A stretch of 64,000 bases of DNA from positions 124,001 through 188,000 of IMG/VR virus record IMGVR_UViG_3300035703_000006, one strand, 5' to 3'. This document shows positions 21,351 to 29,909 of this stretch, one piece after another (within the stretch, counting starts at the first letter, position 1; each line of letters opens with the position of its first letter). The translations under genes and the position numbers were made by a program. Below the pieces are notes generated by a model. That model saw nothing but the letters and a program-made list of their open reading frames with translations. It did not search any database and was not told the origin of the DNA.

Positions 21351-22079
21351 ATGCCATTACCTAAGATTTCTACACCAACGTATGAATTGGTTTTACCCTC
21401 AACTGGAAAAACAATTAAATACAGACCATTTTTAGTTAAAGAAGAAAAAATATTAATTCTTGCTCTTGAAAGCCAAGATACAAAAGAAATTACAAATGCA
21501 ATTAAACAAGTATTAAAGGATTGCATTTTAACCAAAGGAGTTAAAGTAGAGGAACTTCCAACTTTTGACATTGAATATTTGTTCTTAAATCTTCGTTCAA
21601 AGTCTGTTGGTGAATCTATTGATTTGATTATTACTTGCAGTGATGATATGGAAACCCAAGTTCCAGTCACAATTTATATTGATGAAATTCAAGTTCAAAA
21701 AGAAGAAGGTCATAGTATTGATATCAATCTTGATGGAAATTTAACTTTAAGAATGAAGTATCCATCTTTAGATCAGTTTATTAAAAATAATTTTGATTTT
21801 AGTACAGAACAGAGTGCATCAAATATTGAAAAGTCATTAGATATTATTGCTTCTTGTATTGATATAATATTCAGTGCAGAAGAGAGTTGGGCAGCATCTG
21901 ATTGCACAAAGAAAGAATTAGTTTCTTGGATTGAATCATTAGATTCAAATCAATTTAAACAAATTGAAAACTTTTTTAGTACAATGCCAAAACTTGCTCA
22001 TAAAGTAAAAGTCAAGAATCCAAAGACAGGAGTTGAAAGTGAAGTTACGTTGGAGGGGTTAACATCTTTTTTCGGTTGA
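21351..22079 (+). CDS. g26: Baseplate hub subunit gp26
   Basis: MPLPKISTPTYELVLPS...YRPFLVKEEKIL...FDIEYLFL.LR.KSVGE...TMPKL. Confidence 0.92.
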   Translation: MPLPKISTPTYELVLPSTGKTIKYRPFLVKEEKILILALESQDTKEITNAIKQVLKDCILTKGVKVEELPTFDIEYLFLNLRSKSVGESIDLIITCSDDMETQVPVTIYIDEIQVQKEEGHSIDINLDGNLTLRMKYPSLDQFIKNNFDFSTEQSASNIEKSLDIIASCIDIIFSAEESWAASDCTKKELVSWIESLDSNQFKQIENFFSTMPKLAHKVKVKNPKTGVESEVTLEGLTSFFG

Positions 22080-22279: not shown

Positions 22280-24028
22280 ATGGCAATAGGTTCGGTTCTG
22301 AACCCAGAAAAAATAGTAGGTAAACAGAATACAAACCAACAACTTGCTAGAAATTTTATTTCTGGTGGGTCTTTTCTTGGGACATCTTCAATTGCTTCTG
22401 CTGCAAATAAAATAGTAGGATTTCAGAGGGGTACTGCAAAACCAGTTCCATCTTCAGTAGATTCAATTGTAAGTACTATTTCTACAAATATTACAAATAA
22501 TATAACAGGTACTTTAAATAATACTCTTCAGAGTTTTACCTCAGATTATAAGAAAAGAGTATCTGACGTTGATTCTGCAAAACCAACTAGCATTATAAGT
22601 AAATTTTTAACTACTTATAAAAATGTAACACAATTTATTCAGTTTTTTGGGAACAAAAAATTTGTGAATGGAATAAGTGATAATTTAAAAAGTCTTTCAA
22701 AATCATTTACTGAAAGTTTTGAAGTTGCAAAATTAATTCGTCAGGTCATTGTAAAAATAGTACAACAATTATCAAATCTCCCAAAAGCAACTCCTGGTGG
22801 TGGAGGTGGAATTGATATTGATGTTGATGTTCCTATGGGTGGTGTGAGAAAGAGCGCACCAAGAGGACTTGGGAATATGTTTAAAGGAAGAGGCAAAATG
22901 CTTGCTCTTGGTGCTGGTGCTCTTGGAGTAGGTGCTGTTGGTGCTGGTGCAGTCAATGCACTTTCTAATGTTGATGAAATCAGAGCAGGAATGTTCCAAC
23001 CAGGAGATGGTGGAGACATTATATCAACTTTTGGTTCTGCGATAGAGAGATTTATTGCAGCAATCAATACGATGGTTGGCATTGGGAAAGGTTCTAAACC
23101 TCCTGGTGGTGGAAGTAGTGGTGGAGGAGGTGGTGGGGGAAGTCCTGGTAGTCCTGGTGGTCCTGGTCCTGGTGGTCCTGGTCCTGGAATCACTCCCCCA
23201 CCAACTGGTGAGATAAGTGGTAATCAACAACAAATTGAATCTCAAATGTTTGATTATCTTAAACAAAATTATGGAGAAAATGTTGCTTATGGTATGTTGT
23301 CCAATGCAATGAGGGAAAGTGGTTATAGAACTAATGCACCAGAAGGTGGTTTTTTTGGAATGTTTCAATTAGATAAAAACAGAGAAGCAAGATTTAAGGA
23401 ATGGGCAAAATCTAAAAATCTTGATCCAATGAGTCACCAGGCCCAATTGCAGTATGGGGTTATAGAGGCACAACAACTTGGAACTTTAGATAGAATGAAA
23501 GCAGCAAAAACACCAGAAGATGCTGCAAGTCTTTTTTATAATGAATTTGAAAGAGCTGCTTATAGCAAACCGATTGTTGGTTCTGCGTATACACCTGACA
23601 ATCCACATGAACAAAAAAATAGAATATTTCTACAGAAAATAAAAGAAAGGCAATCTAAAAGAGTCCCTGGAACAATTCCTGGAGCACCACCAGCTCCAGT
23701 ATTGCCCTCTCCCCAACAATCACCTTTAGGGCAAGGTGGGCCAGATTTACCAGATTATATGCTTCCCCCAGAAAAAAGAGATCAATATAGAAACTTAGCA
23801 ACCAATGTTTCGCAACCTGTTCAGACAGCAGCACAATCACAAACAAATATTGTACCAATAGATTTGTCTGGCACAATTCCTCAACAATCTCAAGGTGGTG
23901 GAGGAGGTGTTTCGGCACCACCATCAACTCAAAAAAATGGACCTTCAGTTCCACTATTACCTTCTACAAACACCGATAACTTTTTAGTTTTATATTCAAG
24001 AATGGTTTATAACATAGTAGACGGATAA
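22280..24028 (+). CDS. Large tail-associated protein with phage tail lysozyme (lysozyme2-type) domain
   Basis: GMLSNAMRESG...GMFQL...QLQY...TPEDAASLFYNEFER at about 23225-23560, after a helical region and a Gly/Pro linker. Confidence 0.78.
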   Translation: MAIGSVLNPEKIVGKQNTNQQLARNFISGGSFLGTSSIASAANKIVGFQRGTAKPVPSSVDSIVSTISTNITNNITGTLNNTLQSFTSDYKKRVSDVDSAKPTSIISKFLTTYKNVTQFIQFFGNKKFVNGISDNLKSLSKSFTESFEVAKLIRQVIVKIVQQLSNLPKATPGGGGGIDIDVDVPMGGVRKSAPRGLGNMFKGRGKMLALGAGALGVGAVGAGAVNALSNVDEIRAGMFQPGDGGDIISTFGSAIERFIAAINTMVGIGKGSKPPGGGSSGGGGGGGSPGSPGGPGPGGPGPGITPPPTGEISGNQQQIESQMFDYLKQNYGENVAYGMLSNAMRESGYRTNAPEGGFFGMFQLDKNREARFKEWAKSKNLDPMSHQAQLQYGVIEAQQLGTLDRMKAAKTPEDAASLFYNEFERAAYSKPIVGSAYTPDNPHEQKNRIFLQKIKERQSKRVPGTIPGAPPAPVLPSPQQSPLGQGGPDLPDYMLPPEKRDQYRNLATNVSQPVQTAAQSQTNIVPIDLSGTIPQQSQGGGGGVSAPPSTQKNGPSVPLLPSTNTDNFLVLYSRMVYNIVDG

Positions 24029-26124
24029 TGAAAAAAGTAATCTCTTCTCCTTTAGTTGCTGCTTCCAATAACATAGTTTCTTTTAGTGGAGATTCTTCAA
24101 GAAGACTAAAAGGAATTCAAAGAGAAGTTATTAATTTTTCTAAATTTTTAAATACTCAAAATAAACAAATTGAAAGAATAAAGTTACCAGAAAAAAGAAA
24201 AATTAAAGAACTTGCAAACTTAAACATTGCATCAAGTTTTGGTTCTCCTGGAAATTTATTATCATCATTATTGGATGGTGCATTGGATGTTGCTGGATTT
24301 CTTGGTAATATGTTCCCACCAAGAGGAAGAATGGGAGCTCCTCAAAATACCAGAGGATTAAGACCACCAAAACCAATGGTCTCTGGTTCCAAGTTGCAAT
24401 TTGGAGGACTTAAATCTGTAGGTATTTTGAATGCGGTTTTTTCTGGATTGGACTTTGCTCAGGGATTATCAGAAGGAGAAAGTGCAGGACAAGCAGCATC
24501 AGGAGCAGTAGGAAATCTTGCTGGTTCATTGCTTGGTGGTGCTATTGGGCAAGCATTGATTCCAATTCCTGGACTTGGTTTTGTACTTGGAAGTATGGCA
24601 GGTGGATTTCTTGGTGGTTATGCTGCAGATAGAACGTATGAACTTGCGACTGGTGGTGCTGGAGGTGTGTCTAGTAAAGTTGAAGAAAGACTAAAAGCAC
24701 AGGAACAGCAACAAAAAGCATCAGTTCAAGAAAGTGGATTTGGTGATATAATAAACAGATTTAGTGACTCTGTAGGAAAGTTTGAGAACTTTGTTTATAA
24801 GTCATTCGCAAATGTAATGAATGCTGCAGCATCTACTGCTGGTTCTGATCAAATGATGATGGATTATGGATTAGATCCAGATGCAATTCCCGATTCCCCT
24901 GAACTTCCGGGGGACCTTCCAGAAATGACTGCAGAAGGTGGAGACATTCCAAGTAGGGTTGTATCTTCTTCTTATGGAATGAGATGGGGGAGACCACATA
25001 ATGGAGTTGATTATCCTAGACCAGATGGAACTCCGGTAAGTGTAATTCAACCAGGAACCGTTACTTCTGCTGGATGGAATGATGGTGGATACGGATATAT
25101 GGTTATGATTTCCCACCCTGGTGGTAATACAACTCTTTATGGGCACTTAAGTAAAATATCAGTCAAACAAGGACAACAAATAGAACCTGGAACTGTAATT
25201 GGAAATGTCGGAAGTACTGGACGTTCTACTGGACCACACGTCCATTTTGAAGTTAGAAGAGGAGGAGGTGGTATTCAAATACCAAATAATGAAGGAGACA
25301 AGTATTTCAGATTTGGTGGAAATGTAAAAGCAAAACCAAAGTCAGGAGTTTCGGGAGCAGGTTCTAATCCTTTTGTTTTAGAATTGCACGCAGACCCAAA
25401 TGCAAAAGGACAAAAAACAGGATTAATCCCAAGTAATACTAGTCCAGATACTGCTGTTTCTCAAGCACTTGTGTCTAGTTTCGGGACTTATGGTAAAAAT
25501 TTTAGAGGAGGATTGGGTGTTACAAATAGAGGTGGAAACATTCTAGAAACAGATATGGCATTAGGTGCTGAAGCAAATGCAAGAAGAATAGTTGAAGCAA
25601 TGATGAAAGACCCTAAACGTGCATATCATATTTTTGCAGGACACGCTGATGTGACAAAAGGTGAAACTGGTGCTCCTGGAGAAAAGGAATATAATTTGAA
25701 AACTGCTGAATTGGTTGAAAAATTAGCAAAAGCACAAAAATTAAATGTAATGTATCATAAATCTATTATCGCAAATGAAGCAAGTGATCCAAATTCAAAT
25801 CTCTCCAGAATTAAAGCAATAATGGATGCTCCAAAGAGACCTGGAATAGGAGGTCCAGATTTGACACCAGAAGCAATTGCTGCATATCAATCTGGAATGA
25901 TTCAAAATCTTCAACAATACCCTTCTTATAATCAACTACAACAGGTTACAACAATTATACCAATGATGATGAGTTCTCAAGGTGGAGGAGGACAACAAAA
26001 ACCAGTTTTTATTCCAGTTGGTGGAGGTGGGGGAGGTACTGTAATTCTTCCTGGTCCAGATGAAGGACAGGTGGTAAATAGTCTTATGAAAACTATGTTA
26101 CTTACTAATCTGTCAGCAAGCTAA
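24028..26124 (+). CDS. Large tail-associated protein with M23 peptidase and an amidase-like domain
   Basis: HNGVDY...YGHL...STGPHVHFEV (M23); LELHAD, ILETD, IFAGHAD..GEKEYN (amidase_3 motifs in permuted order). Confidence 0.85.
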   Translation: MKKVISSPLVAASNNIVSFSGDSSRRLKGIQREVINFSKFLNTQNKQIERIKLPEKRKIKELANLNIASSFGSPGNLLSSLLDGALDVAGFLGNMFPPRGRMGAPQNTRGLRPPKPMVSGSKLQFGGLKSVGILNAVFSGLDFAQGLSEGESAGQAASGAVGNLAGSLLGGAIGQALIPIPGLGFVLGSMAGGFLGGYAADRTYELATGGAGGVSSKVEERLKAQEQQQKASVQESGFGDIINRFSDSVGKFENFVYKSFANVMNAAASTAGSDQMMMDYGLDPDAIPDSPELPGDLPEMTAEGGDIPSRVVSSSYGMRWGRPHNGVDYPRPDGTPVSVIQPGTVTSAGWNDGGYGYMVMISHPGGNTTLYGHLSKISVKQGQQIEPGTVIGNVGSTGRSTGPHVHFEVRRGGGGIQIPNNEGDKYFRFGGNVKAKPKSGVSGAGSNPFVLELHADPNAKGQKTGLIPSNTSPDTAVSQALVSSFGTYGKNFRGGLGVTNRGGNILETDMALGAEANARRIVEAMMKDPKRAYHIFAGHADVTKGETGAPGEKEYNLKTAELVEKLAKAQKLNVMYHKSIIANEASDPNSNLSRIKAIMDAPKRPGIGGPDLTPEAIAAYQSGMIQNLQQYPSYNQLQQVTTIIPMMMSSQGGGGQQKPVFIPVGGGGGGTVILPGPDEGQVVNSLMKTMLLTNLSAS

Positions 26125-27437
26125 TGTCTCAATCTGTAGCAGCATTTAAACCGAATTATTTCATTATACAATCATTGGATGGTAGTAAAAAACTTGACGT
26201 TACTAACTCGTTACTATTTTTTGATTACTTTGAGGATATTTTATCTCCTTGTATAACTGCTACTGCACAAATAGTTAATAGTACAAGTTTGTTTAATCTT
26301 TTACCAATTCGTGGTGGAGAAAAAGTTTCTATCAGTGTTGATACCGCATTTGGTGAGTTCTTATTTGATGGTGATAATGCTTTTTATGTTTATAAGGTCA
26401 GCAACCTTGATGCTCAAAAATCAAGTGAAATGTTTACATTGCATTTAGTTTCTCGTGAAGGATTAACAAATGATACTGCTAGATGTGAAAGAAAATATAC
26501 AGGTAATATTCAAACTACAGTAACTAAAATTTTAAAGGATGTATTAAAAACTAAAAAATTTAAGAGTGAAAATATAGAAGGAACATCCAACGATTTTTCT
26601 TTTATTGGAAATAATAGAAAACCATTTCATATTTTAACTTGGTTGGGACCAAAAGCAGTTCCTGCGAATGGACAAAACTCTGGAACGTCGGGTGGAAATA
26701 ATAGTGGAATAGCAAAAGGAACTGCAGGGTTTTTATTCTATGAAAATAAAGATGGATTTAACTTTAGAAGTATTGATAGTTTAGTGTCAAGTACTAAGAT
26801 TCAAAATAATAGTGCTGATAAGGAATCAATATACAATTATCAATATGCTCCAATCATTGAGAGTAATAATGTAGAAACAAATTTTAGAATTTTAAATTAC
26901 AAGTACGAAAAGAATATTGATTTAATGAAATCCTTGAGAGTTGGTATGTATGCAAATAAAACATATTATTTTGATTTGTATTCAAATACTTTAGACATTT
27001 ATAAGTATACATTAAAAGACCAAGTTAAAAATAAACTAGGTGCAGCAGAAAGCATTGCTGTTTCTGATGAATTTGGAGATAGTATTAGTAGAATTATGGT
27101 TAAAGTTTCTGATAGAGGAAATTTAAACAACGATGGTACGATAAGTGGTAAGTCAAGGAGTGGTGCTGATATGTCAATGTCTTATTCTAGATATAATTTA
27201 TTGTTCACACAAGCACTAAATATGGTCATACCTTGCAATATAAGATTAAAAGTTGGAGATATTATAAATGCTCAGTTTCCAAAGATCACAAGATCTGATA
27301 ATAAAGAAGCAGACAATGAACAAAGTGGAAAATATTTGATTAAAGAACTGAGACATCACTTTGAAGGAAATCAAATGGTTACAAGTGTAAAATTAATTCG
27401 TGATAGTTATGGTCTTTATGGTCCCGAAAATGTTTAA
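26124..27437 (+). CDS. Baseplate hub protein (gp27/Mu gp44-like)
   Basis: DYFEDILSP, GFLFYENKDGFNFRSID, L.VGDII...SGKYLIKELRH; located upstream of g5. Confidence 0.7.
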   Translation: MSQSVAAFKPNYFIIQSLDGSKKLDVTNSLLFFDYFEDILSPCITATAQIVNSTSLFNLLPIRGGEKVSISVDTAFGEFLFDGDNAFYVYKVSNLDAQKSSEMFTLHLVSREGLTNDTARCERKYTGNIQTTVTKILKDVLKTKKFKSENIEGTSNDFSFIGNNRKPFHILTWLGPKAVPANGQNSGTSGGNNSGIAKGTAGFLFYENKDGFNFRSIDSLVSSTKIQNNSADKESIYNYQYAPIIESNNVETNFRILNYKYEKNIDLMKSLRVGMYANKTYYFDLYSNTLDIYKYTLKDQVKNKLGAAESIAVSDEFGDSISRIMVKVSDRGNLNNDGTISGKSRSGADMSMSYSRYNLLFTQALNMVIPCNIRLKVGDIINAQFPKITRSDNKEADNEQSGKYLIKELRHHFEGNQMVTSVKLIRDSYGLYGPENV

Positions 27438-27442
27438 GAAAA

Positions 27443-27652
27443 ATGGATTTACAAGAAACTATAAATGAAATTTGTGAGGAACTTATGGAGTCCTCAATAA
27501 ATAAACAAAGAAAAAGATACTTAAGTGCATATCTTGAGGATCTTATTAAATATCAAAAAAATAATCCTACGGCAACACAAACGCCAACAACATTTGAATT
27601 GTTTTGTGCGTTAAATCCTGATTCCTCCGAATGTAAAATTTACGATGATTGA
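27443..27652 (+). CDS. cp12: CP12 Calvin-cycle inhibitor-like protein (phage type)
   Basis: C-terminal FELFCALNPDSSECKIYDD matches the CP12 C-terminal Cys-pair motif. Confidence 0.8.
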   Translation: MDLQETINEICEELMESSINKQRKRYLSAYLEDLIKYQKNNPTATQTPTTFELFCALNPDSSECKIYDD

Positions 27653-29909
27653 AGAAGCATTATTAAAATCCAATTATATTGGTAAAGATGGTTTTCACTG
27701 GTGGATTGGTCAAGTAGCAAATCAAAATTCTTGGAAAAGTAAGTCTCAGTTTTCCGAAGAAAAAGGTTCCGATGGAAAAGTATGGGCAGCAAGATGTAAA
27801 GTAAGGATTGTTGGACATCATACTTTTGATGGCAATGTCCTTCCTGATGATGATTTGCCTTGGGCACAGATTATGATGGACCCTGCATTTGGAAGTGGTC
27901 AGGGTGGTATGGGTGCTACAATTAATCTAAAAGGTGGGGAAACTTGTTTTGGATTTTTTATTGATGGGGATGATGCTCAGCAACCAGTGGTAATTGGGTT
28001 GCTCCATCGCAGTGATGGTGTTAAGAATTTAATTAGTGAAGAATCAATAGCAAAAGAAAAAAGTTCTCAATTTAAACCATTCACTGGTCATCCTGGAAAT
28101 AACATCCCAGCAACTCAAAGAAGTGCAAGAAAACGTAAATCCATTACTCCTGAAAATCCTCAAACAGAAACTTCTCCATTATCAACAAAAGATAAAGTAG
28201 ATCTTGCTTTTAATTCAAATGTTGGATTTTATACTGGGACTACTCGTGTGTTTCCTCAGTATGGAGATAGACTTCAATTTGATGCTGCATCAATTTGGCA
28301 AGTTGCAAAAAAGGCAGACATAGAAATTACAATACCTAATGGTTGTCAAAATGGATTAATTGGAGATATCTCACAAGCTCTTCAGAGCTTTATGGCAATT
28401 ACAAATGGACTAGACCAATATTTAAATGTTTATGTAGATGCTGTACTAAATGAAATCGTAGATATACAAAACCAAATTCGCAATACTGCTAGGTCTATAC
28501 TTGGTATTGTGAAACTCATTATTAATAATTTAAGAAACACAATTTTTAAATGTATTACTTGGGCATTTAGAAAATTAGTTGGTCTTGTTGTCCCACAACC
28601 TCAACAAAAGATTGTTTTGGAATCAATGAAGAAAATTCTTGATGTAATTTTTTGTATTCTAGAAAAACTTCCATCAAGTCTTTTGAATTTTATTACAGAT
28701 GCATTAAGTGATTTGGTGAATAGAACAGTAAATGTTCCTCTTTGTGCAGCAGAGGAATGGACTGCTGGTATCCTTGCTAAATTAATGGATTCAATTGAAA
28801 ACGCATTATCTGGAATAATGTCTGGTATTAGTTGGTTGACTGGTGGATTAGGAACAATTTCTGGAATTTTAAATCAAGCAAGTTCATTGGCATCTCAAAT
28901 TTTTAGTTTTCTTGAGTGTACTGGACTTGCTTGTAAAAAACCTTACACTTGGGCAGCAAAGTTTGGTCCAAGTGAGAAAGAGGCAGATGATTGGAAGAAG
29001 ATGGTTAGTAGTGTGAACGTATTTAAGACTGCTGCTAATGCGGGAAGTTCAATAGAAAATGCTCTTCGTGATACTTCTTTATATTCTGCTGTCGATACAT
29101 TTGGATCTGGATTTGGTGGATTAATTGATAGAGCACTTAGTAATATATCTTGTTCATCCAAAGTTCTCAATCCGACCAATCAGGATGATTTAATGAGAAT
29201 GCCAATCGGAAGTAGGTGGAAAACTTGCATACCACCTCAAGTTTATATCACTGGAGATGGAGTAGGTGCTAAAGCAATTCCAATAGTTGGTGATAATGGT
29301 AGAATTTTCTCTGTGCAAATTATCAATAGAGGAGTTGGATATCAAAATGGAACAACAGATGTTAGAATTGTTGATAAAAGTAATTATGGTTTAGGTGCAA
29401 CTGCAAGAATTGAAGTTGATGAAAAAGATGGTGGAATCAATAGAATTGTAATTCTAAATTCTGGAGATGGGTATTGTAAAGGTAATATTGGTCTTGGAAC
29501 AAATGTAGTTGGTGGTCTTGGAACAAATGTAGTTGGTGGTCTTGGAACAAATGTAGTTGGTGGTCTTGGAACGAATTCATCTGGAATAAGTTCATCTATA
29601 ACTGGAATAGTTACTGACATTGTTGTGGATAAACCAGGTTATGGATATACGACTGGAGATAAAATTACTGATGGAAAAAATACTTATGAACCAATTGTTT
29701 CTCCAGGAAGTGGAGCAATTGTGGATGTTAAGATACCGACAAACATTATAGGCGGATTTAAAGACATTCCTATATTGACTATAAATACCAACACGGGGGT
29801 AGGAGCAGAACTCATTCCAGTTATGCAATTTACTCCAAATTATTCTTCAACAACTGGTATTCCAGCAGTATCTGGAATCGCAGTAACCTCAGTGATAGAT
29901 TGTGTATGA
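27645..29909 (+). CDS. g5: Baseplate hub/spike gp5, N-terminal OB-fold part
   Basis: GKDGFHWWIGQV...RCKVRIVGHH...LPWAQIM...GFFIDGDDAQQPVVIG; no T4 lysozyme motif recognised. Confidence 0.85.
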   Translation: MIEEALLKSNYIGKDGFHWWIGQVANQNSWKSKSQFSEEKGSDGKVWAARCKVRIVGHHTFDGNVLPDDDLPWAQIMMDPAFGSGQGGMGATINLKGGETCFGFFIDGDDAQQPVVIGLLHRSDGVKNLISEESIAKEKSSQFKPFTGHPGNNIPATQRSARKRKSITPENPQTETSPLSTKDKVDLAFNSNVGFYTGTTRVFPQYGDRLQFDAASIWQVAKKADIEITIPNGCQNGLIGDISQALQSFMAITNGLDQYLNVYVDAVLNEIVDIQNQIRNTARSILGIVKLIINNLRNTIFKCITWAFRKLVGLVVPQPQQKIVLESMKKILDVIFCILEKLPSSLLNFITDALSDLVNRTVNVPLCAAEEWTAGILAKLMDSIENALSGIMSGISWLTGGLGTISGILNQASSLASQIFSFLECTGLACKKPYTWAAKFGPSEKEADDWKKMVSSVNVFKTAANAGSSIENALRDTSLYSAVDTFGSGFGGLIDRALSNISCSSKVLNPTNQDDLMRMPIGSRWKTCIPPQVYITGDGVGAKAIPIVGDNGRIFSVQIINRGVGYQNGTTDVRIVDKSNYGLGATARIEVDEKDGGINRIVILNSGDGYCKGNIGLGTNVVGGLGTNVVGGLGTNVVGGLGTNSSGISSSITGIVTDIVVDKPGYGYTTGDKITDGKNTYEPIVSPGSGAIVDVKIPTNIIGGFKDIPILTINTNTGVGAELIPVMQFTPNYSSTTGIPAVSGIAVTSVIDCV
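29490..29572 (+). repeat. 24-bp tandem repeat x3.5 (GLGTNVVG)
   Basis: ggtcttggaacaaatgtagttggt exact x3 plus a partial copy. Confidence 0.95.

What the first reader, a model, noticed from the sequence alone, without database searches (positions are those of the whole stretch)
25366..25830. Apparently circularly permuted Zn-amidase fused behind an M23 peptidase
Seen, in N-to-C order: FVLELHAD..TGLIP (His at 25387), FRGGLG...ILETD (Glu at 25546), helix ARRIVEAM, then IFAGHAD (His at 25642)..GEKEYN (Glu)..AELVEKL..NVMY..SNLSRIKA. Established: amidase_3 (N-acetylmuramoyl-L-alanine amidase) domains have the order xxGH...E (first two Zn ligands), then xxH (third ligand), then the catalytic E and a final helix. 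Here the two halves are swapped while every catalytic motif is kept. From recall, the local motifs resemble a picocyanobacterial amidase-like family in the normal order. Inference: a natural circular permutant forming a dual-activity (endopeptidase plus amidase) virion peptidoglycan hydrolase.
Basis: partly seen in the sequence, partly recalled or inferred. Interest (0 to 1): 0.75.

Follow-up and report, generated by a model that had tools for sequence, protein, structure and literature searches.

The report
Circularly permuted cell-wall amidase domain
A cyanophage tail-hub protein carries, behind an M23 peptidase, a zinc amidase-like cell-wall domain whose two halves are in swapped order compared with its relatives in host cyanobacteria and other cyanophages, yet every catalytic residue is kept: a natural circular permutation that appears to be undescribed.

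Summary
ORF 24028-26124 (+, 698 aa) lies in a T4-like baseplate-hub module of a 247-kb cyanophage. It has an intact M23 peptidase (aa 323-414) followed by a 155-aa domain (aa 447-601, window 25366-25830).

A search of 1.84 billion proteins found a small, unnamed family with the same order as the window. It also found a sister family that matches in two pieces in reversed order. That sister family includes 255 Prochlorococcus/Synechococcus/Cyanobium loci, Ma-LMM01 gp094 and S-CREM2 ORF208.

- **Permuted versus normal-order family:** two swapped profile-profile hits (P 1e-18 and 2.5e-17). Against a tandem-doubled target they become one alignment (P 6e-33).
- **Normal-order family versus Amidase_3 (PF01520):** one colinear full-length alignment (95%, P 2e-8).
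- **Both orders pooled versus Amidase_3:** 97%, P 2e-10.
- **Permuted profile versus tandem-doubled Amidase_3:** rises from 45% to 90%.

H539, E552, H454 and E507 map onto the three Zn ligands and the catalytic Glu, and all four are invariant in both orders. The permuted sequences form one clade.

Not shown: enzyme activity, the Zn-site geometry, and presence in the virion. The domain fails Pfam's Amidase_3 threshold, and sequential fold searches find no match.

The parts
24028..26124 (+). Whole gene, 698 aa. Tail-hub or tape-measure-like peptidoglycan hydrolase; its start and stop overlap the neighbouring ORFs by 1 nt.
   Evidence: ORF list; 40 near-full-length homologues in metagenomes.
24499..24627 (+). 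Gly-rich hydrophobic segment (aa ~158-200), possibly membrane-inserting, as in tape-measure or ejection proteins.
   Evidence: Kyte-Doolittle window above 1.2 only here. The functional role is inference.
24994..25269 (+). M23 (LytM-type) metallo-endopeptidase domain, aa 323-414, with HxxxD (H324, D328) and HxH (H404, H406).
   Evidence: Pfam PF01551, 109.9 bits against a cut-off of 28.7. Motifs seen in the sequence and nearly invariant in A1.
25366..25605 (+). First half of the permuted domain (aa 447-526). It corresponds to the C-terminal half of Amidase_3: strand with E452-x-H454 (third Zn ligand), GLIP strand, helix, and the ILE507 strand (catalytic Glu) followed by the last helix.
   Evidence: hhalign: permuted 10-95 against normal-order 102-196, P 1.1e-18. 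Mapping onto Amidase_3 SIHaN and LvE. Atlas fold hits cover model residues 7-92 only.
25606..25623 (+). New linker (KDPKRA, aa 527-532) joining the ancestral C-terminal helix to the ancestral first strand.
   Evidence: Junction between the two hhalign segments. Model pLDDT is 94-98 in this block.
25624..25830 (+). Second half of the permuted domain (aa 533-601). It corresponds to the N-terminal half of Amidase_3: strand FAGH539xD541 (first Zn ligand), GxxGxxGE552 (second ligand), long helix, strand NVMY, and helix DPNSN..RIKA.
   Evidence: Pfam Amidase_3 partial hit, aa 535-578 to profile 3-48. hhalign: permuted 97-170 against normal-order 7-99, P 2.5e-17.
25831..26124 (+). C-terminal Gly-rich region ending in the conserved tail ..LLTNLSA.
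   Evidence: Invariant columns in A1.
22280..24028 (+). Upstream neighbour, 582 aa, Gly/Pro-rich with a Phage_lysozyme2 domain. A third wall-degrading module in the same gene block.
   Evidence: Pfam PF18013, 54.4 bits.
21351..22079 (+). gp26-like baseplate hub protein.
   Evidence: Pfam T4_baseplate, 250.6 bits.
26124..27437 (+). Downstream tail/hub protein (phrog_350).
   Evidence: PHROG E 9e-98.
27645..29909 (+). gp5-like baseplate hub/spike protein with no recognisable lysozyme domain.
   Evidence: phrog_1922 E 8e-111. Pfam finds only a weak Gp5_OB hit.

Best explanation
The 698-aa protein is a virion-borne wall-digesting protein of the baseplate hub (tape-measure-like) of a T4-like cyanophage. 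It carries two catalytic modules. One is an intact LytM/M23 endopeptidase. The other is a compact zinc amidase-like domain that is a circular permutant of a divergent Amidase_3 lineage. In the ancestral order, which is kept in picocyanobacterial host proteins and in virion proteins of other cyanophages, the elements run b1(GH)-a1(E)-b2-a2 | b3(ExH)-b4-a3-b6(E)-a4. In this protein the second block comes first, and a short new linker (KDPKRA) ties the old C-terminal helix to the old first strand. H539, E552 and H454 would bind Zn, and E507 would act as the general base, as in Amidase_3, cleaving MurNAc-L-Ala bonds while M23 cuts peptide cross-links. On tail contraction the hub proteins reach the periplasm and open the peptidoglycan locally for the tail tube. 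Shown here: the permutation, the homology, the conservation of the catalytic residues, the single origin of the permuted clade, and the genomic context. Inferred: Zn binding, bond specificity, virion location, and the duplication-then-truncation route to the permutation.
For: Permutation:
- The A2 profile against 1.84 G proteins found about 26 same-order clusters and 9 that match in two stretches in reversed order, for example P0063 at 3e-12 and 2e-4.
- hhalign of the permuted against the normal-order family gave two swapped hits (P 1.1e-18 and 2.5e-17). Against the tandem-doubled target it gave one alignment, score 221, P 5.7e-33.
- Six stand-alone proteins start directly at the permuted N-terminus.

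Amidase_3 link:
- The normal-order family against 36 PF01520 domains gave a full-length colinear alignment, 95.3%, P 2.1e-8. Pooling both orders gave 96.8%, P 2.2e-10.
- The permuted profile against doubled Amidase_3 gave one alignment across the junction, score 48 against 31.7, 89.7%. Of 150 column shuffles, 149 scored 22 or less.
- The Atlas model of the host family has only PF01520 clusters as named neighbours (TM 0.48-0.62, 165-185 aa).
- 3QAY (CD27L) is the top PDB sequence hit for the normal-order family.

Active site: the mapping is. E452, H454, E507, H539, D541 and E552 are 98-100% conserved in 27 permuted and 52 normal-order sequences.

Selection: this domain is the best conserved part of the protein, with pairwise identity 0.77 against about 0.5 elsewhere.

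Single origin: the permuted clade has SH-aLRT support of 98.

Function and context:
- Fusion partners are M23 (on either side), DPBB and Hydrolase_2.
- The gene lies between the gp26-like and gp5-like hub genes, with synteny in a relative at 38% identity.
- S-CREM2 ORF208, which carries the normal-order domain at the same genomic position, was found in virions by mass spectrometry (PMC10665884).

Model: pLDDT 87.6, pTM 0.86, with secondary-structure elements in the cyclically shifted order.
Against: - The domain fails Pfam's Amidase_3 gathering score (13.6 to 17.3 bits against 27) and matches profile positions 3-48 only.
- Single sequences scored against my Amidase_3 HMM gain almost nothing when the halves are swapped (9.3 to 9.5 bits).
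- The family lacks the strand that precedes the catalytic Glu in canonical Amidase_3. It also has two extra invariant acidic residues (E452, D541) that are not part of the canonical site, so the chemistry or substrate may differ.
- There is no biochemical evidence for any member of either order.
Confidence: 0.8

Rival explanations
1. The domain is a real permutant of the cyanobacterial/cyanophage family, but the whole family (both orders) is not a MurNAc-L-Ala amidase. It would be a related Zn, or two-metal, hydrolase with another target in the cell envelope, such as a peptide bond of the stem, a carboxypeptidase-type cut, or deacylation.
For: - The family has its own signature, ExH and GHxD, with two extra invariant acidic residues (E452, D541). 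It also lacks one strand of canonical Amidase_3.
- It is not recognised by Pfam or NCBIfam models.
- Every picocyanobacterial genome checked already has a separate canonical Amidase_3.
- Identity to Amidase_3 is only 13-23% in the profile alignments.
Against: - The H/E/H ligand spacing and the catalytic Glu match Amidase_3 position for position.
- All named structural neighbours of the host family are Amidase_3.
- Fusion partners are all peptidoglycan hydrolases.
Confidence: 0.15
2. The resemblance to Amidase_3 is convergent or spurious. On this view the domain is an unrelated alpha/beta Zn-hydrolase fold, for example creatininase-like or SGNH/flavodoxin-like, in which this element order is native.
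For: - Direct permuted-versus-Amidase_3 hits are individually weak (P 2e-4 and 6e-3).
Against: - The link through the normal-order sister family is strong at both steps (P 6e-33, then P 2e-8 to 2e-10).
- The two weak direct hits fall in exactly the order and register that a permutation predicts.
- Shuffled and reversed controls score 12 to 22 against 48 for the real alignment.
Confidence: 0.04
3. The domain is a catalytically dead binding or scaffolding module, and only M23 is active.
For: No activity data exist. LytM/Amidase_3 pairs in bacteria include non-catalytic partners; EnvC, NlpD and ActS appear among the M23 hits.
Against: - All four catalytic positions and the surrounding glycines are invariant in 79 sequences of both orders.
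- The domain is more conserved than M23.
- It is retained in a homologue that has lost M23 (P0037).
- It occurs alone in small proteins.
Confidence: 0.05
4. The swapped order is an assembly, frameshift or gene-calling artefact of this contig.
For: None found.
Against: There is one open frame without stops. The same order appears in 40 close homologues from many samples, 21 IMG/VR contigs and about 26 divergent clusters.
Confidence: 0.01

Closest known systems
Unnamed picocyanobacterial/cyanophage 'ExH...GHxD' amidase-like family in normal order. Members include a core protein of about 250-300 aa in Prochlorococcus, marine Synechococcus and Cyanobium; Microcystis phage Ma-LMM01 gp094 'baseplate protein'; and Synechococcus phage S-CREM2 ORF208.
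   Same: It has the same motifs and the same ten invariant residues. Profile similarity is P 6e-33 once the order is accounted for. The phage members sit in the same baseplate-hub position and are next to or fused with M23.
   Different: The order of the two halves is reversed. The window's family starts at the ExH strand and ends after the DPxxNW helix. The host members are separate cellular proteins with an N-terminal extension. No family model or experimental function exists for either order.
Pfam PF01520 Amidase_3 (N-acetylmuramoyl-L-alanine amidases such as CwlV, AmiA/B/C, and the endolysins CD27L and PlyPSA)
   Same: Distant homology (hhalign 90-97%). The His/Glu/His Zn ligands and the catalytic Glu are at equivalent positions. 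Both act in a peptidoglycan-hydrolase context.
   Different: - The topology is circularly permuted.
- The score is below Pfam's gathering threshold.
- One strand before the catalytic Glu is missing.
- There are extra invariant residues E452 and D541.
- There is no autoinhibitory helix insertion (from my knowledge of AmiB/AmiC; not tested here).
Two-enzyme tail-tip or tape-measure wall hydrolases of phages, for example phi29 gp13 (lysozyme-like plus LytM/M23) and tape-measure proteins with M23 domains (PHROG 10030, 167, 4070)
   Same: Both are virion-borne proteins of the tail/hub that combine M23 with a second wall-cleaving domain. The phi29 example rests on my own knowledge.
   Different: Here the second domain is the permuted amidase-like module. 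Together with the neighbouring Phage_lysozyme2 protein, the locus encodes three different predicted wall activities.
Circularly permuted members of the NlpC/P60 (papain-like) wall-hydrolase superfamily
   Same: This is a precedent for natural circular permutation of a peptidoglycan-hydrolase catalytic domain with the catalytic residues retained (from my own knowledge; not tested here).
   Different: It is an unrelated fold with unrelated chemistry (Cys-His rather than Zn). I found no report of permutation for Amidase_3 in the held literature.

Membership tests
Pfam PF01520 Amidase_3 | Score at or above the curated gathering threshold (27 bits). | tested here: not met
   13.6 bits for the whole protein and 17.3 bits for the domain alone, covering profile positions 3-48 of 174 only. 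A six-frame search of the genome gives 15.5 bits.
Pfam PF01520 Amidase_3 | Zn ligands His (GH strand), Glu (start of helix 1) and His (SIHaN strand), plus the catalytic Glu (LvE strand). | tested here: met
   The hhalign mapping gives H539, E552, H454 and E507. All four are invariant in 27 permuted and 52 normal-order sequences.
Pfam PF01520 Amidase_3 | Canonical order of elements: b1-a1-b2-a2-b3-b4-a3-b5-b6-a4. | tested here: not met
   The order here is b3-b4-a3-b6-a4-b1-a1-b2-a2. The b5 region is absent in both the permuted and the normal-order families.
Pfam PF01520 Amidase_3 | Homology to the family (common descent). | tested here: met
   - Normal-order sister family against Amidase_3: 95.3%, P 2.1e-8.
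- Pooled family against Amidase_3: 96.8%, P 2.2e-10.
- Permuted profile against doubled Amidase_3: 89.7%, P 1.9e-6, with shuffles at 22 or less.

Pfam PF01520 Amidase_3 | Three-dimensional fold with a mononuclear Zn site. | tested here: inconclusive
   The model is confident (pLDDT 87.6). The available aligners are sequential and find nothing significant. Only residues 7-92 superpose on cyanobacterial family models, at rmsd 2.7-3.1.
Pfam PF01520 Amidase_3 | MurNAc-L-Ala amidase activity. | not testable with these tools
   Needs biochemistry.
Picocyanobacterial/cyanophage ExH-GHxD amidase-like family (unnamed) | Shared motifs and invariant residues: GHxD, GxxGxxGE, DPxxNW, ExH, GLI, FGxY, RGxxxLE. 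| tested here: met
Picocyanobacterial/cyanophage ExH-GHxD amidase-like family (unnamed) | Colinear domain order (GHxD half first). | tested here: not met
   HMMER and hhalign give reversed two-piece matches. The permuted sequences form their own clade.
Pfam PF01551 Peptidase_M23 | Gathering score, plus the HxxxD and HxH metal-binding motifs. | tested here: met
   109.9 bits. HNGVD and HVH are present in the sequence and nearly invariant in A1.
Virion-associated peptidoglycan hydrolase of the baseplate hub / tape-measure class | Encoded within the hub module and physically present in the virion. | tested here: inconclusive
   The genomic position between the gp26-like and gp5-like genes is met. 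Virion presence is known only for S-CREM2 ORF208, a normal-order relative at the same position (PMC10665884).

The most novel reading that the evidence does not exclude
The permutation is adaptive rather than neutral. It arose once in T4-like cyanophages from a host-like normal-order amidase. It moved the chain ends to the a2/b3 loop, so that the domain can be threaded through the tail tube and refold, or act, as part of an extended tape-measure-like protein. Alternatively, it could give a constitutively open active site that needs no LytM-type activation. The ExH/GHxD family, including a core and still uncharacterised Prochlorococcus/Synechococcus protein, would then be a new class of wall hydrolase with its own metal site.
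Probability: 0.15. Interest if true: 0.75.

Novelty: new variant of a known kind. Interest (0 to 1): 0.6.

Why it matters
Amidase_3 is one of the main catalytic modules of bacterial autolysins and phage endolysins, and it is widely used in lysin engineering. A natural permutant with its unpermuted sister family at hand is a ready-made pair for asking three things: how this fold tolerates relocated termini, how permutations arise, and whether new fusion geometries are possible.

The work also gives a first functional lead for two sets of proteins. One is a conserved Prochlorococcus/Synechococcus protein family that has no family model and is partly auto-named 'dehydrogenase'. The other is a set of large cyanophage hub proteins annotated only as 'hypothetical', 'baseplate protein' or 'endolysin'.

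Finally, it shows that profile scans and sequential fold searches both miss this domain. Similar permutants may therefore be hidden among viral proteins of unknown function.

Tried and rejected
- **Sequence search of the PDB:** nothing useful with the domain alone or with the family profile. A weak hit to acetylpolyamine amidohydrolase, E 0.64, was judged chance.
- **Plain HMMER of native versus half-swapped sequences against my Amidase_3 HMM:** no real gain. Profile-profile comparison was used instead.
- **Cultured phages:** tblastn of the domain found no cultured phage with the permuted order, only normal-order relatives.
- **Duplication intermediate:** I looked for a protein with three alternating half-domains among the 38 representative hits and found none.
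- **Protein language-model features:** only weak leads for the domain (score 0.62, although 54 of 100 hits carry Amidase_3).
- **Shuffle outlier:** one column shuffle scored 131.9 over 6 aligned columns. This is a numerical artefact of hhalign.
- **Literature:** searches found nothing on permuted Amidase_3.
Full report
**What is there**

The window is bases 124001-188000 of a 247-kb virus record. The finding lies inside one open frame, 24028-26124 on the + strand, encoding 698 aa. The codon positions given for His 454 (25387), Glu 507 (25546) and His 539 (25642) are exact.

Pfam finds an M23 peptidase at aa 323-414 (109.9 bits). It also finds a sub-threshold Amidase_3 match in which aa 535-578 align to profile positions 3-48 of 174 (17.3 bits on the domain alone, cut-off 27).

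**Context**

The gene sits in a T4-like tail/baseplate block:

- on the minus strand: gp53-like wedge, gp48-like tube cap, DNA end protector and head closure;
- on the plus strand: a tail-tube-like protein, a gp26-like hub protein (250.6 bits), a 582-aa Gly/Pro-rich protein with a Phage_lysozyme2 domain, this gene, a phrog_350 tail protein, a 69-aa CP12 gene, a gp5-like hub protein, and tail fibres.

The three hub genes overlap by one base. The same gene order, including CP12, is found on the contig of a relative with only 38% identity in this domain (P0052). The nearest cultured phages by tblastn are Synechococcus phages B23 and B3. Their gp10 shares the M23 domain but not the amidase-like domain.

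**The family and its mirror image**

A word-indexed search returned 40 near-full-length homologues (alignment A1).

A profile of the domain (A2) was then scored against 1.84 billion representative proteins and gave 38 hits. About 26 of them have the domain in the window's order. Six of those are small proteins in which the domain starts at residue 1-10 with the ...LELH.D strand, so the permuted order is an autonomous domain.

Nine further hits match in two separate stretches in reversed order. Profile positions about 88-162 (FAGHxDV, GETG..E, helix, NVxY, DPxxNW) lie N-terminal of positions about 4-80 (LEIHFD, SGLIP, FGxYP, FRGGLGxPRRG, ILE). Both stretches are individually significant, for example P0063 at 3e-12 and 2e-4, P0066 at 3e-5 and 2e-9, and P0071 at 2e-7 and 1e-4.

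A scan of one genome per species found 255 loci of this normal-order form, nearly all in Prochlorococcus, marine Synechococcus and Cyanobium.

Among cultured phages only the normal order was found. Ma-LMM01 gp094 ('baseplate protein', aa 337-519, E 1e-29 to the normal-order HMM) is followed by an M23 gene. S-CREM2 ORF208 is a 1565-aa protein that lies next to the gp26-like gene.

**Quantifying the permutation**

hhalign of the 27-sequence permuted alignment (A3) against 50 non-redundant normal-order sequences gives two hits in swapped order:

| Permuted columns | Normal-order columns | P |
|---|---|---|
| 10-95 | 102-196 | 1.1e-18 |
| 97-170 | 7-99 | 2.5e-17 |

Against the same target alignment written twice in tandem, they fuse into a single alignment of 159-169 columns with score 221 and P 5.7e-33.

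**Link to Amidase_3**

I collected 36 PF01520 domains from 41 cyanobacterial genomes, canonical and divergent.

- The normal-order family aligns to them colinearly over the whole profile: 95.3% probability, P 2.1e-8.
- Pooling both orders, with the permuted rows re-ordered for analysis only, gives 96.8%, P 2.2e-10.
- The permuted profile alone gives two weak hits in swapped order: 101-141 against 4-47 (P 2.2e-4) and 10-68 against 75-133 (P 6e-3).
- Against the tandem-doubled Amidase_3 alignment it gives one alignment running across the junction: score 48.0 against 31.7, probability 89.7% against 45%, P 1.9e-6.
- As controls, 149 of 150 column shuffles score 22 or less. The remaining one is a 6-column numerical artefact. 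The reversed alignment scores 12.

Two results support the link independently. The ESM-Atlas model of the host family has only PF01520 clusters as named structural neighbours (TM 0.48-0.62 over 165-185 residues). The best PDB sequence hit of the normal-order profile is the Amidase_3 endolysin CD27L (3QAY), aligned on the Glu and ELH motifs, although at E 0.44.

The host genomes each carry a separate canonical Amidase_3. Neither Pfam nor NCBIfam recognises the normal-order family at threshold.

**Active site**

In the alignments:

- H539 falls on the GH histidine;
- E552 falls on the Glu at the start of helix 1;
- H454 falls on the SIHaN histidine;
- E507 falls on the catalytic Glu of the LvE strand.

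These four are 98-100% conserved in 27 permuted and 52 normal-order sequences, together with E452, D541 and four glycines.

Among full-length homologues this domain is the best conserved part, with mean pairwise identity 0.77 against 0.49-0.53 for the N-terminus, M23 and the C-terminus. One homologue has lost M23 but keeps the domain (P0037).

Both orders differ from canonical Amidase_3 in two ways. They lack the strand that precedes the catalytic Glu, and they carry the ExH and GHxD acidic residues.

**Structure**

With the 27-sequence alignment AlphaFold2 gives a confident model (pLDDT 87.6, pTM 0.86). Its elements are E10-15, E26-28, H37-46, E65-68, H75-86, E93-98, H113-130, E134-137 and H152-161. 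This is the Amidase_3 series started at b3, and the new linker region has pLDDT 94-98.

Sequential structure searches find no significant match in the PDB, AFDB clusters, Swiss-Prot or BFVD. The Atlas search returns cyanobacterial proteins of 175-197 aa, one cluster named 'amidase family'. These superpose only on model residues 7-92, at rmsd 2.7-3.1 A. This is what a permutant should give.

No permutation-aware aligner and no coordinates were available, so the fold and the Zn geometry remain unverified by structure.

**Evolution**

I built a tree from the permuted rows (re-ordered), the normal-order rows and an Amidase_3 outgroup.

- All 27 permuted sequences fall in one clade (SH-aLRT 98).
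- The host proteins fall in another clade (SH-aLRT 99).
- The permuted clade lies next to two normal-order phage proteins, P0071 and S-CREM2 ORF208, with weak support (80). P0071 is itself M23 followed by a normal-order domain.

All members share the same break point. This fits a single permutation event in a phage lineage. No tandem-duplicated intermediate was seen.

The permuted family is rare, unnamed and found only on metagenomic, phage-like contigs. Its fusion partners are M23 on either side, a DPBB domain and Hydrolase_2, all of which act on the cell wall.

**How it most likely works**

The protein is probably a hub or tape-measure-like component that is expelled into the periplasm on tail contraction. 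Four observations point this way:

- its position among the hub genes;
- a Gly-rich hydrophobic segment;
- PHROG matches to M23-bearing tape-measure proteins;
- the mass-spectrometric detection of S-CREM2 ORF208 in virions (PMC10665884).

Once in the periplasm, M23 would cut peptide cross-links and the permuted domain would cut MurNAc-L-Ala bonds. The neighbouring Phage_lysozyme2 protein would add a glycan-cleaving activity. The gp5-like spike has no detectable lysozyme domain of its own. All of this is inference from homology and context.

**Novelty**

Full-text searches for circular permutation together with this amidase family returned only papers on circularly permuted genomes. I therefore rate the finding as a new variant of a known kind: a permuted branch of a divergent, unmodelled Amidase_3-like family. 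It is not a member of PF01520 by Pfam's own criterion, but it very probably works like one.

Noticed in passing
window 27443-27652 (+): A 69-aa CP12 gene (Pfam 39.2 bits). CP12 is a cyanophage auxiliary metabolic gene (Calvin-cycle regulator). Here it is embedded in the baseplate-hub block between the phrog_350 protein and the gp5-like hub. It occupies the same position on the syntenic contig L163.
   Followed up: partly
window 22280-24028 (+); L001 2195-4897 (Synechococcus phage B23 gp10): The 582-aa upstream protein carries Phage_lysozyme2 and long Gly/Pro runs. In phage B23 the lysozyme2-like region and M23 are in one 900-aa protein without the amidase-like domain. The hub wall-hydrolase genes are therefore modular and are split or fused differently between relatives.
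   Followed up: partly
window 27645-29909 (+): The gp5-like hub/spike protein has no recognisable lysozyme domain, unlike T4 gp5. It contains a short tandem repeat, GLGTNVVG, four times near its C-terminal third.
   Followed up: no
window 24028 and 26124: The stop and start codons of three consecutive hub genes overlap by one base, which suggests coupled translation.
   Followed up: no
L003-L082 (picocyanobacterial genomes): The normal-order relatives form a conserved single-copy-looking gene in Prochlorococcus, marine Synechococcus and Cyanobium (255 loci). It has no Pfam or NCBIfam model. One Atlas cluster of 1618 members is auto-named 'dehydrogenase', which is probably a mis-annotation of a wall amidase-like enzyme.
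   Followed up: partly
L138 760-5457 (S-CREM2 ORF208) and the following ORF209: Two giant 'endolysin' virion proteins (1565 aa and about 1456 aa) follow the gp26-like gene in the phage with the longest known cyanomyovirus tail (about 418 nm, PMC10665884). Their combined length would suit a tape-measure role. ORF208 carries the normal-order amidase-like domain at about aa 798-950.
   Followed up: partly
P0037 (homologue, 757 aa): This close homologue has replaced the M23 region with unrelated sequence but keeps the permuted domain at 88% identity.
   Followed up: no
window 24994-25269 with 25366-25830: In bacteria, LytM/M23-type proteins (EnvC, NlpD, ActS) activate Amidase_3 enzymes. Here an M23 domain with intact catalytic motifs is fused to an amidase-like domain. 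Whether there is any functional cross-talk between the two is unknown.
   Followed up: no
P0075 (751 aa, hit): This hit to the domain profile is a repetitive, coiled-coil-like protein that matches only the helix region (profile 73-129) three times. It was judged a spurious low-complexity match.
   Followed up: partly
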